Position numbers and translations under genes: made by a program | Notes under the pieces: generated by a model | Told to the model about the DNA's origin: nothing | Seen by the model: only the letters and a program-made list of their open reading frames with translations | Databases searched by the model: none | NCBI RefSeq assembly: GCF_000143415.4 | Contig: NW_003314261.1 | Location: 6,236,822 to 6,300,821 of the forward strand | From: Selaginella moellendorffii | Lineage: Eukaryota; Plantae; Lycopodiophyta | DNA: 64,000 nt | Direction: 5' to 3' | Part shown: one piece after another, positions 24,105-29,436 of the stretch | How positions within the stretch are numbered: the stretch's first letter is position 1 | Layout of the letters: each line of letters begins with the position of its first letter

Positions 24105-24213
24105 TGTTAAGCACCAGGTCAGGTCAGAATAATAGGATAAGGAAAGGGCCCTGCAATCAAGTGATCACCCCTTTAGCCAATTAGCTTAGGGTGTAAGGGA
24201 TAGGATCCTAACA
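24105..24213 (+). mobile_element. Short LTR of a TRIM family (copy 1)
   Basis: TGTTAAGCACCAGG...GGATCCTAACA, nearly identical to 29132-29234. Confidence 0.85.
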
Positions 24214-24215
24214 TT

Positions 24216-24362
24216 AATGTTATGATCCAGCGCAAAAAGACAAAGATCTTCTGCTTCTTGGACCCCTTTGCATCTGAAGTAGTCACCACCGACTTCAACT
24301 TGTGATGCTTAGGGGTCCAAGAAGCAGAAGATCTTTGTCTTTTTGCGCCGGATCATAACATT
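24216..24362. repeat. Inverted repeat (~52-bp arms, 43-nt loop) made of Gypsy LTR-end and gag sequence
   Basis: aatgttatgatccagcgcaaaaagacaaagatcttctgcttcttggacccct pairs with aggggtccaagaagcagaagatctttgtctttttgcgccggatcataacatt, with one mismatch. Confidence 0.9.
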
Positions 24363-27300
24363 GGTATCAGAGGAGAGTTTTGTGGCGCTGAAACGATTGT
24401 TGAGCGAGGCTCCAGTGCTTCGCATTGCTGATCCATCGAAACCTTACGAGGTGACATGCGATGCGAATGGTTATGCACTGGGAGGAGTTCTCATGCAAGA
24501 GGGACAGCCTATTGCATATGAGAGTCGAACTTTGAATTCCGCGGAGCAACGCTATTCCACATATGAGCAAGAGTTACTCTCTATTGTTCATGCTTTGCGG
24601 ACGTGGCGGCACTATCTTTATGGTGCAGTGTTCGCAGTGTTGACAGATCACAAACNNNNNNNNNNNNNNNNNNNNNNNNNNNNNNNNNNNNNNNNNNNNN
24701 NNNNNNNNNNNNNNNNNNNNNNNNNNNNNNNNNNNNNNNNNNNNNNNNNNNNNNNNNNNNNNNNNNNNNNNNNNNNNNNNNNNNNNNNNNNNNNNNNNNN
24801 NNNNNNNNNNNNNNNNNNNNNNNNNNNNNNNNNNNNNNNNNNNNNNNNNNNNNNNNNNNNNNNNNNNNNNNNNNNNNNNNNNNNNNNNNNNNNNNNNNNN
24901 NNNNNNNNNNNNNNNNNNNNNNNNNNNNNNNNNNNNNNNNNNNNNNNNNNNNNNNNNNNNNNNNNNNNNNNNNNNNNNNNNNNNNNNNNNNNNNNNNNNN
25001 NNNNNNNNNNNNNNNNNNNNNNNNNNNNNNNNNNGGCCGGTCATTTTGGGGGGAAGAAGACGTATGAGTTGATTAAGTGCAACTTTTATGGGAGGAATAT
25101 GAAGGCTGATATCCTCAAGTATTGTAAATCATGCGAGCTTTGTCAGCAGGTTAAGGTGCCACGGGAGAAGCCAGGGGGACTTTTGCAACCTTTACCTATT
25201 CCTTAGAGCCGTTGGTGTAGTATCTCTATGGACTTCATCACTTGTTTGCCACGAACACAGAGGCAAAAGGAGCAAGTATGGGTCATAGTGGATCGGTTGA
25301 CGAAGTATGTGCGGTTGATGGCTCTTCAGAAGACTGTCACTGCCTCAGACTTGGCTGCGGTTTACTTGGAGAAGGTTTTTCCTGATTTTGGTTTGCCGGA
25401 GGAAATCATTAGTGATCGAGATTCAAAGTTCACCAGTGGATTTTGGAAAAGCTTTGCAAAGGCTATGCAAGTGACTTTGAAACTCTCGAGTGGAGATCAT
25501 CCTCAGACGGATGGGCAAATTGAGCGTGTGAATCAGGTGGTGGAGGATATGCTACGTTGTAGCATTGGTCAAAGGCAAGGACAGTGGGATCTATATCTTC
25601 CGTTGGTGCAATTTGCTTACAACAATAGCCAACACAGTGGAACCAAGCTAAGTCCTTACTTTGCCATGTTTGGAAGGCATCCTCGAACAGCGGTGAAGTT
25701 GGGATTGCATTTGAGTAAGGACGTTCAAGATAAGCTTGATTCCGAGGCAACTGATCTGGCCACAGAACTTGATGAGATTCTGGTGGTGTGTAAACGGAAT
25801 TTGCAAGCAGCTCAGGATAGAGCGGAGAAGTTTGCCAATGAGCATCGCCAATTCTGGGAATATAAGGTGGGTGATCTCGTCTTTGTGCGAGTGATCTTTC
25901 CGTCAAGTGAGCGGCGGAACACCTTGGTGCCTTTACGGACAGGGAAGAGTGATAAACTTTCCCATCGATATGCTGGTCCATATGAAGTGCTGGAGCGCAT
26001 TGGTAAAGCGGCTTATCGGGTGCGGCTGCCAGTTGGGGTGAAAATTCATCCGGTATTTTATGTCAACTAGTTGAAAGGTGTACTATCTCGGAGTGACGGG
26101 CCCAATGCCTCCTTGATGTATATGGTTGTGGAAGATGGACCAGGAGCTTGAGCAGGATTCCCTAGAAAGGGTGATCACCGGTACAACTCGTCCTTGGGAC
26201 AAGGACTTTGTTGGGGGGAAATAATTGTTAGGCACCAGCTTTGACTACGTGGTCAACGTCGGTCAAAGGGAGGCTCAAGGGTATATTAAGGCATGTTACT
26301 TAACCTACCCTAGGGCTCACAGTGGAGTGGCGGCGCAGTGGAGCTTTTGAGGTAGCTCGGGGGTGGTTGGGTGGTGAGGAACCTCAAGAGGTGGCGTAGC
26401 ATAGTCTAGGGCAACTACATCTTTATCTTTTTGCGCCGGATCATAACATTGGTATCAGAGGATTGGTTGCGATGGCCGACCAAGCTGAACACTGGAATCC
26501 TATCATTGATGGTGGTGGCGAGCGATGGTGCNNNNNNNNNNNNNNNNNNNNNNNNNNNNNNNNNNNNNNNNNNNNNNNNNNNNNNNNNNNNNNNNNNNNN
26601 NNNNNNNNNNNNNNNNNNNNNNNNNNNNNNNGAGATGCATGGCATGATGGATACCATGTGTGGGCGTGTTGAGGCACTCGAGGCTGGACGGGGTAGCGCT
26701 CCAAGTAAGCCTTCTTTGGTAGATCGACTCAAGATTCCAACTTTTTCCGGTGATGGTGGTGTGGACGAGTGTCTCGCTTGGCTAGCCAATGTGAAGAAGT
26801 TCTTGGCTGCTAGAGGAACTCCCCATGCAGAGGCTTTAGTGGCTATTCCGATGGTTTTGCGTGATGCGGGTTTTCGATGGTGGAATTGGCTTGAGGAGTC
26901 CCGTGTTGCAGATAAGAAACCACCAGTGTCTACCATGGATGAGTTTCAGGCTGCTTTCCGTTTACGTTTTGCCCCTCATTACGATGTGGAGAATGCTTGT
27001 ATAGAACTTCGCCATTTCCAGCAAGGGAAAATGACGCTTGGGGATTATATTGAGAAGCTTACTCGCTTGATTAGTCATATTCCAACGAAGGATCCAGATC
27101 AGAACAAGTCGTACTTCATTGATGGCCTACATAGTGAGAGCATGCGGCAACACTTGCGTCATTCTCAGCCTACAAAGAGTTTGGAGGAGCTCTTTGATGC
27201 GGCTCGTCGACTTGACAATGACAAGCACAAGTCTCGCAAGCGTTCACGGAGTCCTTCTGTCGAGAATCGTCGTGATGATCGCCGTGGACACAAGGATGGG

Positions 27301-29050
27301 AACAAGCATCACAAGTTGAAGTCGGTGGTGACTACTTCAGATGCAAAGGGGTCCAAGAAGCAGAAGTTCTTTGTGAAGAATTATCGACAGGGTTGTCATA
27401 ATTGCGGCGAACTTGGACACTACAAGGCTGATTGTCCACAGTTGAAGAACAAGCACCAGGACAAGAAGAATGGCCAATCTTCTTCTCACGGTAAGTCCGA
27501 TACTAAAAAGTTGCAAACTTTGCAGCGTGAGGATGAGGAGAACGACCATTCCGGTCGGAGGAAGAGACTTTCGATCGTTGCTCGTCAACTCAACTGTGTG
27601 TGGAACAAGATGGAGCTTGAGGATACGCATGAATCAGCTTTAATGCTAGAGGGCGTGTTCCGTGGCGATCCAGTGCGGATTTTACTGGATAGTGGGAGCG
27701 ATGACAACTTTGTTTCGGCAAAGTTTGTTGCGGAGCATCGCCTGAACACACATGGAGTTCTTCCATACACAGTGGAAGGTGCAGCTACCTCTACTCAGCA
27801 TTTTGATGCTTGTGTCGAGGGGCTGGAAGTGTTGGTTGGCAAAACCACACTTGTGGAGACTTTTTATCTCGCGGATATCCATCGTGTGGATCTCATTCTT
27901 GGGATGCCATGGTTGGTGAAGGTGGATCCAGAGATAAAGTGGAGCATTAAGCGTATCTCGTTGGAGTATGGTGGCGTTAAAGATGTGTGGTTTGGCGAGG
28001 ACGTTCAACCACCAGTTGTTATGCTCTCTGCTACATCTTTGAAGCGGGCTTGTCGTAATGGAAAAGCACTTTCAAGTTACTTGCTGTTTGTTCGTGACTT
28101 GGGGGACCAAGGCACGTGTGGGGGAGAAGCAGCAGTACGGGATGTACTTGATGAGTTTTCTGATGTTTTTCCATCTGAACTTCCTCATGGATTGCCTCCA
28201 TTACGAGGTGTGGAGCATGGGATTACATTGGAGCCGGGGACGCGGCCAATTTACCGGCATCCATTTCGGTTAAGTTATGCAGAGGAGCAAGAAGTTCAAC
28301 GACAAGTCAAGGAGTTACTTGAGTTTAAATTCATTCAGCCAAGTAAGTCTCCATTTGGTGCTTCAGTCTTGCTTGTGAAGAAGAAGGACGGTTCAATGCG
28401 AATGTATATTGACTACCGCGCTTTGAACAAGAAGACAGTGAAGGATAAGATGCCGATGCCACGTGTGGATGATATCCTAGACAAGCTTGGTGAAGCATGA
28501 GTGTTTACCAAGATTGATCTGAGGAGTGGATATCATCAGATTGCAATGGATGATGCATCTATCTCCAAGACGGCATTCAACACAAGCTTTGGACATTTTG
28601 AGTTTACCGTTATGCCGTTTGGTTTGACAAATGCACCGGCCACATTTACTCGGTTGATGACGGAGGTATTTGGGTGTTATCTTCATGAGTTTGTGGAGAT
28701 TTTCTTGGACGATATTCTTGTTTTTAGCAAGAATATAGAGGAGCATAGGGTGCATTTGCACAAGGTTCTTTTGTTACTTCAAGACAGCAAACTTTATGCG
28801 AAAAAGAGCAAATGTGAATTTGCAAAGTCGGAGGTGGAATATCTAGGCCATATTGTGACATCTAAGGGTGTCAAGACGGATCCAAGGAAAGTGGCTGTGG
28901 TGGAAAACTGGCCTACACCGACTATAGTGGCCGAGTTGCGCAGTTTTCTTGGTATGGTTAGTTACTATTGACGTTTCCAGCATAAGTTTGCAGAGGTGGC
29001 TATTCCTTTGACGCGGTTGTTACGCAAGAATGTGCCATTCGAGTGGAAGA
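24330..29050 (+). mobile_element. Ty3/Gypsy retrotransposon in permuted order RNaseH-INT-PPT-LTR-PBS-gag-PR-RT; defective
   Basis: RNaseH (TCDANGYALGGVLMQ) at 24373, integrase (MDFIT..SDRDSKFTS..QTDGQIER..GPY) at 25228-26070, LTR 26226-26448, [28 protein letters not shown] knuckle, LLDSG protease, RT FLDD. Premature stops at 25204, 28498 and ~28969. Confidence 0.9.
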
Positions 29051-29436
29051 AACCCTAAGAGAAGGACCATGGTGACCGGATGGTGGCCTAAGTATGATCG
29101 CGGACGATCATTCCCTGACGAGGGGGAGGATTGTTAGGCACCAGGTCAGGATAATAGGATAAGGAAAGGGCCCTGCAATCAAGTGATCACCCTTTAGTCA
29201 GTTGGCTTAGGGTGTAAGGGATAGGATCCTAACATTGGTATCGGAGCCCAGTTCGATTCTCGTGGCTGACGAGTGGGGTAGGAATATTCTGAAAGAATAT
29301 TCAACATGGTGGATCTAGAGGGAGAACCAAGGTTTGGTAGACCCTAAGAGAAGGACCATGGTGACCGGATGGTGGCCTAAGTATGATCGTGGACGATCAT
29401 TCCCTGACGAGGGGGAGGATTGTTAGGCACCAGGTC
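29051..29436 (+). mobile_element. Tandem TRIM unit(s): internal-PPT-LTR-PBS-internal-PPT-truncated LTR, period 289 bp
   Basis: LTR 29132-29234 (TG..CA), PBS TGGTATCGGAGC (tRNA-iMet type) and PPT AGGGGGAGGA. The internal segment accctaagagaaggaccatgg... occurs twice, and there is no coding capacity. Confidence 0.85.

What the first reader, a model, noticed from the sequence alone, without database searches (positions are those of the whole stretch)
24105..29436. A TRIM fused with a Gypsy that shares its LTR termini: candidate parasite-helper pair caught recombining
Seen: the TRIM LTR starts TGTTAGGCACCAG and ends GGATCCTAACA-TTGGTATCGGAG. The Gypsy LTR (26226-26448) starts TGTTAGGCACCAG and ends GGATCATAACA-TTGGTATCAGAG. 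The LTR interiors are unrelated. The Gypsy lies between TRIM LTRs without a normal TSD, joined at short microhomologies (tgg.aga at ~29044; gag at ~24370). Knowledge: non-autonomous elements keep the integrase attachment ends and PBS of their helper, and helpers of most TRIMs are unidentified. Inference: co-packaging and RT template switching produced a chimeric insertion.
Basis: partly seen in the sequence, partly recalled or inferred. Interest (0 to 1): 0.78.

Follow-up and report, generated by a model that had tools for sequence, protein, structure and literature searches.

The report
Chimeric TRIM–Gypsy retrotransposon cDNA fossil
In the spikemoss Selaginella moellendorffii, a 5.3-kb insertion in a dead cell-wall gene is a patchwork of reverse-transcription products from a tiny gene-less retrotransposon (TRIM) and a Gypsy element that share only their end signals; a second locus carries the two fused inside one target-site duplication, a physical hint that the Gypsy family or a close relative moves the TRIM.

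Summary
The quoted motifs are real. The TRIM LTR and the Gypsy LTR share their first 13 nt, 10 of their last 11 nt, and the spacer plus tRNA-iMet primer site. Everything else is no more alike than shuffled sequence.

- The Gypsy is circularly permuted (RNaseH-INT / its only LTR / gag-PR-RT). Its two break points lie within about 6-15 nt of each other.
- The left TRIM LTR is joined, through two untrimmed U5 ends lying head to head (CA+TT | AA+TG), to a 147-nt fold-back of Gypsy minus-strand DNA that starts exactly at the primer site.
- The right side is a partial tandem TRIM.
- There is no target-site duplication.
- Both assembly gaps are collinear with Gypsy sequence.

A second locus (L001) has Gypsy LTR - Gypsy body - Gypsy LTR - TRIM body - TRIM LTR inside one 5-bp duplication (GCTTT).

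Best reading: a one-off concatemer of aberrant cDNAs from two elements that were active together. The TRIM matches the published SmoRetroS4 by size, and a Gypsy partner for it (SmoLTRA4) has already been proposed. Complex template-switch insertions are also known. Earlier notes of this scan report similar TRIM-Gypsy composites elsewhere in this genome. New variant of a known kind; moderate interest.

The parts
23606..24104 (-). Host: 3' part of an XTH (xyloglucan endotransglycosylase, GH16) pseudogene, left flank of the insertion
   Evidence: XET_C domain, E = 7e-17. The translation reads QDFHIYSILWN directly at the joint and contains stops.
24105..24213 (+). TRIM LTR 'A' (109 bp, with an internal 5-bp GTCAG duplication). 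Its TG end abuts host DNA.
   Evidence: 99/103 aligned bases identical to LTR H.
24214..24217 (.). TT|AA: head-to-head joint of two untrimmed U5 ends, each an LTR CA plus 2 nt
   Evidence: Read directly from the sequence...CCTAACATT | AATGTTATGATCC....
24216..24310 (+). Left arm plus loop of the palindrome. It reads as Gypsy minus-strand DNA: it starts at the U5/PBS border, runs about 30 nt of U5, jumps at TCTTTGT into gag, and then runs 71 nt of gag (the complement of 27304-27374).
   Evidence: Inverted repeats I1 (99%) and I3 (94%). 63/63 identity to gag. A natural gag hairpin sits at the tip.
24311..24362 (+). Right arm of the palindrome: a self-copy of the left arm, plus-sense gag 27347-27374 followed by the U5 end
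   Evidence: The arms are 51/52 complementary. Fold energy -69 kcal/mol, z = -18.
24362..24374 (+). Copy of the tRNA-iMet primer-binding site at the end of the fold-back strand
   Evidence: TGGTATCAGAG at 24362-24372.
24375..26225 (+). Gypsy 3' half: RT-RNaseH connection and RNaseH (to 24655), gap of 379 N (24656-25034), integrase (25035-26067), then tail and polypurine tract
   Evidence: Pfam RT_RNaseH_2 1e-30, Integrase_H2C2 4e-14, rve, SH3_Tf2-1. 88% identity to L001 11173-12347. Gap size fits the reference polyproteins.
26226..26448 (+). The only Gypsy LTR (223 bp), flanked by the true 3' end of the Gypsy body and the true 5' leader. This is the arrangement of a 1-LTR-circle or tandem junction.
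   Evidence: 87% identity to both L001 Gypsy LTRs. It lies inside one contig.
26449..29051 (+). Gypsy 5' half: spacer T plus PBS, leader, gap of 100 N (26532-26631), gag, zinc knuckle, protease, and RT up to ...PFEWKK
   Evidence: Pfam Retrotrans_gag, zf-CCHC, RVP_2, RVT_1. 85% identity to L001 8978-11069. Stops at 28498 and 28969.
29052..29131 (+). TRIM internal region, last ~79 nt including the polypurine tract, joined to Gypsy RT at TGG.AGA microhomology
   Evidence: Direct repeat D1, 29052-29154 = 29341-29443 at 98%. Joint alignment.
29132..29234 (+). TRIM LTR 'H' (103-104 bp)
29235..29420 (+). TRIM spacer, PBS (TGGTATCGGAG), internal region and polypurine tract. LTR plus internal region is 289 bp, so a full unit is 392-393 bp.
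   Evidence: 86-89% identity to L001 12585-12876.
29421..29445 (+). TRIM LTR 'J', first 16-25 nt only. The joint to host is ambiguous over 29434-29445 because of microhomology with the XTH codons.
   Evidence: alignment (10/12 to LTR nt 14-25); the same bases read F-Y-P-D in the XTH frame.
29446..29580 (-). Host: 5' part of the same XTH pseudogene, containing the DEIDFEFL catalytic motif
   Evidence: Glyco_hydro_16, E = 2e-10. Aligns to residues 82-125 of poplar XET 1UMZ.

Best explanation
The insertion at 24105-29445 is a one-off concatemer of aberrant reverse-transcription products from two retrotransposons that were active in the same cell. One is a 393-bp TRIM, SmoRetroS4 by size. The other is a Ty3/gypsy family with about 223-bp LTRs.

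Shown by the sequence:
1. A Gypsy minus-strand DNA started at the tRNA primer site and copied about 30 nt of U5. It then jumped prematurely into gag at a 7-nt match, snapped back on a natural gag hairpin, and copied itself back to the primer site.
2. The 5' end of that strand still carries the two bases that integrase normally removes. It is joined head to head to an equally untrimmed U5 end of a TRIM LTR.
3. The Gypsy body is circularly permuted around one LTR, with both break points in the RT-RNaseH linker only 6-15 nt apart.
4. The permuted body runs by microhomology into the interior of a partial tandem TRIM.

Inferred:
- The permuted body arose in one of two ways. Either the polymerase jumped into a Gypsy RNA at that point, ran to the RNA's 5' end, made the normal R-to-R transfer, and ran off where the template had already been degraded. 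Or a 1-LTR circle broke once.
- The pieces were joined by template jumps and/or host end-joining.
- The concatemer entered a break in a dead XTH gene. The left end is an exact LTR terminus, possibly a half-site integrase reaction. The right end was joined by microhomology, so there is no TSD.

The TRIM and the Gypsy share only the integrase-attachment ends and the PBS. Together with the L001 element, where Gypsy and TRIM share an LTR inside a single GCTTT duplication, this suggests that the same integrase and reverse transcriptase handle both. By my estimate the odds are about 0.6 that this Gypsy family or a close relative mobilises the TRIM.
For: - Anatomy and repeats.
- Domain order.
- Palindrome arms 51/52 complementary, loop 63/63 identical to gag, start at CA+2.
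- Hairpin.
- Four reference polyproteins all have exactly 4 residues between FEW and [D/E/Q]ESF, so at most about 15 nt of Gypsy sequence is missing. Two independent breaks would fall this close with a chance of about 0.3%.
- Gaps collinear.
- Termini specific: against comparators.
- Interiors unrelated.
- L001: crossover inside the shared ATAACATTGGTAT block, TSD GCTTT on both sides, chance 0.0012.
- Tandem arrays of SmoRetroS4 are published.
- Three-LTR complexes with a TSD, made by template switching, are published.
Against: - There is no TSD and the right LTR is truncated, so a later deletion or a two-step history cannot be excluded.
- No empty-site allele or second read-level confirmation could be obtained.
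- Template switching inside a particle and nuclear end-joining cannot be told apart from this sequence.
- Against the helper inference: no leader or packaging similarity; the PBS is generic; the published SmoLTRA4 has LTRs 98% identical to the TRIM's and is the more obvious partner; both Gypsy copies seen are defective.
- Only one extra locus could be examined.
Confidence: 0.6

Rival explanations
1. Post-integration DNA rearrangement. A TRIM (or tandem TRIM) first inserted normally into XTH. Later, chromosomal breaks, unequal recombination between nearby copies and illegitimate deletions brought Gypsy DNA in and removed the TSD.
For: - There is no TSD, the right LTR is truncated, and the joints show microhomology.
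- LTR A is somewhat more diverged from H (96%) than the right-hand repeats are from each other (98%).
- Recombination-derived complexes are common in plants.
Against: - It does not explain why both partners of the left joint end exactly at LTR CA+2.
- It does not explain why the inverted Gypsy piece starts at the primer site and folds back at a gag hairpin.
- It does not explain why the two Gypsy break points coincide within 6-15 nt.
- No other copy of either element lies within the 64-kb window to recombine with.
Confidence: 0.15
2. Assembly artefact. Repeat-induced mis-joins or a misplaced 1.5-kb contig (25035-26531) in a gapped draft scaffold created the permuted order and the palindrome.
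For: - Two N gaps lie inside the element.
- The central contig is short.
- No independent haplotype or read data could be reached.
Against: - All odd joints lie inside contigs.
- The permutation holds even without the central contig. The left contig ends in RNaseH and the right contig begins in gag, and both are anchored to adjoining codons of one XTH gene.
- Gap sizes match the expected Gypsy sequence.
- A comparable chimera exists on another scaffold.
Confidence: 0.07
3. A real cDNA chimera, but no helper relationship. The two elements merely co-occurred, joined through the generic iMet PBS, and the TRIM is mobilised by SmoLTRA4-type elements only. The shared ends would then reflect common ancestry of related Gypsy lineages.
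For: - SmoLTRA4 has LTRs 98% identical to the TRIM's.
- No leader similarity to this Gypsy.
- The PBS is shared even with an unrelated Cassandra-like TRIM.
- Earlier scan notes report PBS-joined chimeras between other family pairs.
Against: - 13/13 and 10/11 terminal identity with unrelated interiors implies selection on the integrase-binding ends.
- The L001 composite was integrated using one end of each type.
Confidence: 0.18

Closest known systems
SmoRetroS4 (TRIM) and its putative autonomous partner SmoLTRA4 (Ty3-gypsy) of S. moellendorffii, Gao et al. 2016 (PMC4717578)
   Same: Same species. The TRIM unit is 392-393 bp with a 103-104 bp LTR, against the published 393 bp and 104 bp. The family is published as forming tandem arrays. 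The proposed partner is a Ty3-gypsy element.
   Different: Identity rests on size only, because the published sequences could not be fetched. SmoLTRA4 carries the TRIM's own 104-bp LTRs (98% identical) and is 4373 bp long. The Gypsy here has unrelated LTRs of about 223 bp and a longer body, and shares only the terminal 13 and 11 nt and the PBS.
Template-switch 'complex insertions' (three LTRs, two bodies, one TSD), Sabot & Schulman 2007 (PMC1950507)
   Same: L001 has three LTRs, two internal regions and a flanking 5-bp TSD. The window element has a body-LTR-body adjacency of the same kind.
   Different: The published cases join two copies of one family and have matching outer LTRs. L001 joins a coding Gypsy to a TRIM and has two different outer LTRs. 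The window element has no TSD, is permuted rather than dimeric, and carries a fold-back and a U5-U5 joint.
Unintegrated retroviral DNA by-products: self-primed minus-strand strong-stop DNA, 1-LTR circles, and end-joined untrimmed LTR ends as in 2-LTR circles. The comparison rests on textbook retrovirology, which is my own knowledge and was not checked here.
   Same: A minus-strand start at the PBS with the primer's terminal base retained. Snap-back at a hairpin. A single LTR flanked by the 3' end of the body and the 5' leader. Two extra bases kept at each joined end.
   Different: Here these by-products are fossilised in a plant chromosome as one concatemer of two different elements. The joined ends are U5-U5, not U5-U3.
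[quoted passage not shown]
   Same: Reports tandem copies, LTR donation between TRIM families, and template switching as a common process.
   Different: Those chimeras are between non-autonomous families. No permuted autonomous body or untrimmed-end joint is described in the passages I read.

Membership tests
TRIM (terminal-repeat retrotransposon in miniature) | Whole element under 1 kb with short LTRs of about 100-250 bp | tested here: met
   LTR 103-109 bp; LTR-to-LTR spacing 289 bp, so the unit is 392-393 bp.
TRIM (terminal-repeat retrotransposon in miniature) | TG...CA LTR ends, a PBS next to the 5' LTR, and a polypurine tract before the 3' LTR | tested here: met
   TGTTA...TAACA ends, T + TGGTATCGGAG, and GAGGGGGAGGA before the LTR. 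That the PBS matches tRNA-iMet is from my own knowledge.
TRIM (terminal-repeat retrotransposon in miniature) | No coding capacity | tested here: met
   The 186-nt internal region has no domain-bearing ORF.
TRIM (terminal-repeat retrotransposon in miniature) | 5-bp target-site duplication | tested here: not met
   None at 24104/29446 in the window. In L001 only the Gypsy+TRIM composite has one.
SmoRetroS4 (Gao et al. 2016) | 393 bp, 104-bp LTR, S. moellendorffii, forms tandem arrays | tested here: met
   Sizes; species; partial tandem at 29052-29445; published values.
SmoRetroS4 (Gao et al. 2016) | Sequence identity to the reference copy ADFJ01000100:60349-60741 | not testable with these tools
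Ty3/gypsy LTR retrotransposon | gag, protease, RT, RNaseH and integrase in that order | tested here: met
   Pfam hits. The order is restored when the two halves are rejoined at the RT-RNaseH linker. No chromodomain hit.
Ty3/gypsy LTR retrotransposon | Two LTRs flanking the body, with a TSD | tested here: not met
   The window copy has one LTR in the middle of a permuted body. The L001 copy has two Gypsy LTRs.
Template-switch complex insertion (Sabot & Schulman 2007) | Three LTRs, two bodies and a flanking TSD | tested here: met
   Met at L001 8583-12878, with GCTTT on both sides. Not met by the window element.
Template-switch complex insertion (Sabot & Schulman 2007) | The two outer LTRs are alike | tested here: not met
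   In L001 the outer LTRs are a Gypsy type on the left and a TRIM type on the right.
Autonomous / non-autonomous (helper-parasite) pair | Shared LTR ends (integrase attachment sites) and PBS | tested here: met
   13/13 and 10/11 terminal identity and 11/12 spacer+PBS. The PBS alone is generic.
Autonomous / non-autonomous (helper-parasite) pair | Shared leader / packaging region or LTR body | tested here: not met
   No similarity above shuffles, z <= 1.1.
Autonomous / non-autonomous (helper-parasite) pair | Demonstrated trans-mobilisation | not testable with these tools
   This needs a retrotransposition assay. The single-TSD co-integration at L001 is indirect support only.

The most novel reading that the evidence does not exclude
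A TRIM may need only about 24 nt of LTR-end sequence plus the PBS of a Gypsy family to be copied and integrated by it. In Selaginella, mixed Gypsy/TRIM cDNAs made by switching at the shared U5-end/PBS block would then be frequent enough to move TRIM LTRs onto coding Gypsy bodies. Under this reading the published 'autonomous partner' SmoLTRA4 (a Gypsy body with TRIM LTRs) would itself be such a recombinant rather than the TRIM's ancestor, and composites like this one and L001 would be the intermediates.
Probability: 0.2. Interest if true: 0.7.

Novelty: new variant of a known kind. Interest (0 to 1): 0.55.

Why it matters
It is still largely unknown which autonomous elements mobilise TRIMs, and how that dependence is maintained. 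Kojima 2024 (PMC10886601) says so explicitly.

Physical fossils that hold both partners in one integration event (L001), or in one concatemer of untrimmed cDNA ends (this window), are rare direct evidence that the two are reverse-transcribed and integrated together. They also point to the minimal signals involved: the terminal 13 and 11 nt plus the PBS.

The window element additionally preserves by-products known mainly from retrovirus biochemistry, now in a plant chromosome: self-primed minus-strand DNA, a retained primer base, and a permuted 1-LTR form. This gives testable predictions for mobilome and eccDNA sequencing in Selaginella.

The value is tempered in three ways. The TRIM and a candidate Gypsy partner are already published. 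Template-switch complexes are a known class. And this scan has already flagged several similar composites in this genome.

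Tried and rejected
- Protein search with the 622-aa gag-PR-RT piece found nothing, because full polyproteins fall outside the allowed length range.
- The integrase piece found only relatives at 56% identity or less, and none named as Selaginella.
- The all-against-all representative search gave one family member, P0007, which led to L001. All other top hits whose source is named were from seed plants; four came from unnamed metagenome or read-archive records.
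- Empty-site search. ORFs next to the insertion are not annotated genes. The nearest annotated gene has a 90%-cluster sister, but that sister's locus L003 is a rearranged paralogous segment, 92-95% identical, without the XTH region. No allele was obtained.
- SmoLTRA4 and SmoRetroS4 reference sequences could not be fetched, and the held supplement holds coordinates only.
- Looking up earlier scan findings by sequence gave blanks.
- The idea that the TRIM is an internal-deletion derivative of this very Gypsy was rejected: leader, tail and LTR interiors are not similar.
- Targeting to Pol III genes was considered, because tRNA-Pro lies about 600 bp from the insertion. It was dropped because L001 has no tRNA gene.
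- A simple nested insertion (TRIM into Gypsy, or Gypsy into TRIM) was rejected because no inner joint is an LTR end with a TSD.

Full report
**Source and setting.** The window is Selaginella moellendorffii scaffold GL377565.1, positions 6236822-6300821 (assembly GCA_000143415.2). A locus fetched through an annotated protein is identical to window 29286-50638. Earlier scan notes had given the species as a lead.

The insertion interrupts a dead XTH (GH16) gene on the minus strand. The right flank encodes ...DEIDFEFL...QEQQHYL (Glyco_hydro_16, 2e-10) and aligns to residues 82-125 of poplar XET 1UMZ. The left flank continues with QDFHIYSILWN and, further on, the XET_C domain. The two flanks are adjoining codons of one gene, so everything between about 24105 and 29445 is a single insertion.

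**Gap test (done first).** The two N runs are 24656-25034 and 26532-26631. The first lies between RNaseH (...VLTDHK) and the integrase zinc-binding domain. In reference polyproteins these points are 131-134 residues apart, about 399 nt, against 379 N. The second lies between the leader and gag, where the related copy in L001 has 85 bp against 100 N. Both gaps are therefore consistent with uninterrupted Gypsy sequence. The frame across them is not knowable. None of the unusual joints is at a gap.

**Checking the observation.**
- The 13-mer TGTTAGGCACCAG starts the Gypsy LTR (26226) and the TRIM LTRs (29132, 29421; 24105 with one change).
- The 19-mer GGATC[A/C]TAACATTGGTATC occurs three times against 0.02 expected.
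- After removing those ends, the LTR interiors, the post-PBS leader and the pre-LTR tail of the TRIM and the Gypsy score no better than shuffles. This holds for both the window and the L001 Gypsy copies (z between -0.3 and 1.1).
- The PBS is uninformative. An unrelated Cassandra-like TRIM at 30272-30832 (minus strand) uses the same TGGTATCAGAG but has LTR ends TGTAAACAACC... and ...GGAGCTTACA.
- A second Gypsy at 31581-37110 has ends TGTCAGGAATCC... and ...GGTCTTGACA.

The shared 13+11 nt are thus specific to this pair.

**Real anatomy, left to right.**
- A: TRIM LTR, 24105-24213.
- TT|AA joint.
- B: a palindrome, 24216-24362.
- C: a PBS copy.
- D: Gypsy RNaseH, gap, integrase and tail.
- E: the only Gypsy LTR.
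- F: PBS, leader, gap, gag, protease and RT up to ...PFEWKK.
- G: the last 79 nt of the TRIM internal region.
- H: TRIM LTR.
- I: TRIM PBS and internal region.
- J: the first 16-25 nt of a TRIM LTR.

The Gypsy is therefore circularly permuted. In four reference polyproteins exactly four residues separate the W of FEW from the [D/E/Q] before ESF. So only about 2-5 codons (6-15 nt) are missing between the end of F and the start of D. Two independent random breaks in a 4.7-kb element would fall this close about 0.3% of the time, which points to a single break or run-off point.

**The palindrome.**
- Its left arm plus loop (24216-24310) is, on the window's plus strand, contiguous minus-sense Gypsy. 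It holds the complement of the last ~30 nt of the LTR and then the complement of gag 27374-27304 (63/63 identical). The two parts are joined at TCTTTGT, which both sources share. The L001 LTRs show that G at this position is the older LTR state.
- The loop contains a natural imperfect hairpin of gag.
- The right arm is the complement of the left arm (51/52) and runs on into TGGTATCAGAG. The whole structure folds at -69 kcal/mol.
- Because the loop is contiguous with the left arm only, the plus strand must have been made left to right. It is a tRNA-primed minus-strand DNA that transferred prematurely, snapped back and copied itself to its own 5' end and the primer.

**The untrimmed ends.** The 5' end of that strand is AA+TGTTA..., the LTR end plus two bases. 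It abuts ...TAACA+TT of TRIM LTR A. Both partners thus end exactly two bases beyond CA. This is the form of untrimmed linear cDNA ends before integrase processing; that comparison is from my own knowledge of retroviral DNA ends. Random breakage would place both ends there with negligible probability. Earlier scan notes describe the same two-base signature at other loci of this genome. I treat that as a lead which this locus independently matches.

**Other joints.**
- F|G shows TGG.AGA microhomology.
- C|D may share GAG or GAGGA. This cannot be checked because L001 has a deletion of about 1.1 kb there.
- The right host joint is ambiguous over 29434-29445. Those bases match TRIM LTR nt 14-25 (10/12) and also read F-Y-P-D where XTHs have F-D-P-T.
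- There is no TSD on any reading. The left end is an exact TG terminus.

**Independent locus.** The only family member in the protein libraries (P0007, 81% identical, RefSeq XP_024545268.1) led to L001, which is GL377627.1:867420-887812. Its layout is:
- Gypsy LTR, 8583-8809
- Gypsy body
- Gypsy LTR, 12357-12589
- TRIM PBS, internal region and polypurine tract
- TRIM LTR, ending at 12878

GCTTT lies immediately outside both ends (chance 0.0012). The switch from Gypsy to TRIM lies inside the shared ATAACATTGGTAT block. There is no trace of a TRIM 5' LTR, and neither sub-element has a TSD of its own. This composite was therefore integrated in one event, using a Gypsy U3 end and a TRIM U5 end. 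It is old: its two Gypsy LTRs are 84% identical.

**Mechanism.** Shown: the reverse-transcription signatures and the single-event integration at L001.

Inferred, for the window:
- The permuted body arose in one of two ways. In the first, the polymerase left the TRIM template, entered a Gypsy RNA in the RT-RNaseH linker and ran to the 5' end. It then made the normal R transfer and ran off where the template had already been consumed. In the second, a 1-LTR circle broke once.
- The fold-back strand's PBS end paired by microhomology with that run-off end.
- The U5-U5 joint was made by end-joining or an end-to-end template jump.
- The concatemer entered a chromosomal break without a concerted integrase reaction.
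- LTR A may be the remnant of a full TRIM cDNA, later collapsed to a solo LTR, or an LTR-only strong-stop duplex.

These alternatives cannot be separated with this sequence.

**What is known.**
- Gao et al. 2016 list eight TRIM subfamilies in this species. SmoRetroS4 (393 bp, 104-bp LTR, forming tandem arrays) has a putative autonomous Ty3-gypsy, SmoLTRA4 (4373 bp, 104-bp LTRs 98% identical, 1218 aa). The TRIM here matches SmoRetroS4 by size only; the sequences could not be compared.
- Sabot & Schulman 2007 described three-LTR complexes with TSDs made by template switching within one family.
- A 2026 sugar-beet survey reports chimeric and tandem non-autonomous elements.
- Kojima 2024 notes that how TRIM dependence on a partner is maintained is unknown.

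New here are three things: the heterologous coding-Gypsy/TRIM pairing with different outer LTRs in one TSD; the restriction of similarity to the att ends and PBS; and the fossilised fold-back and untrimmed-end joint.

**Verdict.** The insertion is a real and unusual fossil of mixed TRIM/Gypsy reverse transcription, and a new variant of a known kind of event. Interest is moderate (0.55). Similar composites were already noted by this scan elsewhere in the same genome.

Noticed in passing
window 30272-30832 (minus strand); further pieces at 31447-31580 and 37111-37535: A Cassandra-like TRIM family with LTR ends TGTAAACAACC... and ...GGAGCTTACA and an iMet PBS. The copy at 30272-30832 has a near-perfect TSD (GAACC/GAACT). 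Another copy is split by the Gypsy at 31581-37110. Related copies occur in L003.
   Followed up: partly
window 31581-37110: A second, unrelated Ty3/gypsy element with ~330-bp LTRs (TGTCAGG...CTTGACA). Its TSD is TCCTT, it lies inside the Cassandra-like TRIM, and it has no iMet PBS after the 5' LTR. Another first-reader note covers 31808-31958.
   Followed up: partly
L001 10892-11173: The L001 Gypsy copy lacks about 1.1 kb (RT end, RNaseH and the start of integrase). It also carries a 103-bp inverted duplicate of an RT segment (10892-10994) at the deletion edge.
   Followed up: no
L003 (GL377622.1:1090907-1112259) versus window 1-9959 and 39286-41535: A paralogous segment, 92-95% identical, holds the SYD-like SNF2 gene tail and the 450-aa kinase-like gene about 8 kb apart. 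In the window they are about 29 kb apart, and the SYD part is inverted relative to the window. This looks like a segmental duplication rather than the other haplotype.
   Followed up: partly
window 21774-21845 (+) and 23425-23496 (-): tRNA-Cys and tRNA-Pro genes lie 2.3 kb and 0.6 kb from the insertion. This is probably coincidence, since the L001 composite has no tRNA gene within 8 kb.
   Followed up: yes
window 23606-24104 and 29446-29658: The XTH gene was already or is now a pseudogene. It has in-frame stops (L*F, WNK*, KIN*), a frameshift in the C-terminal part, and no N-terminal third.
   Followed up: partly
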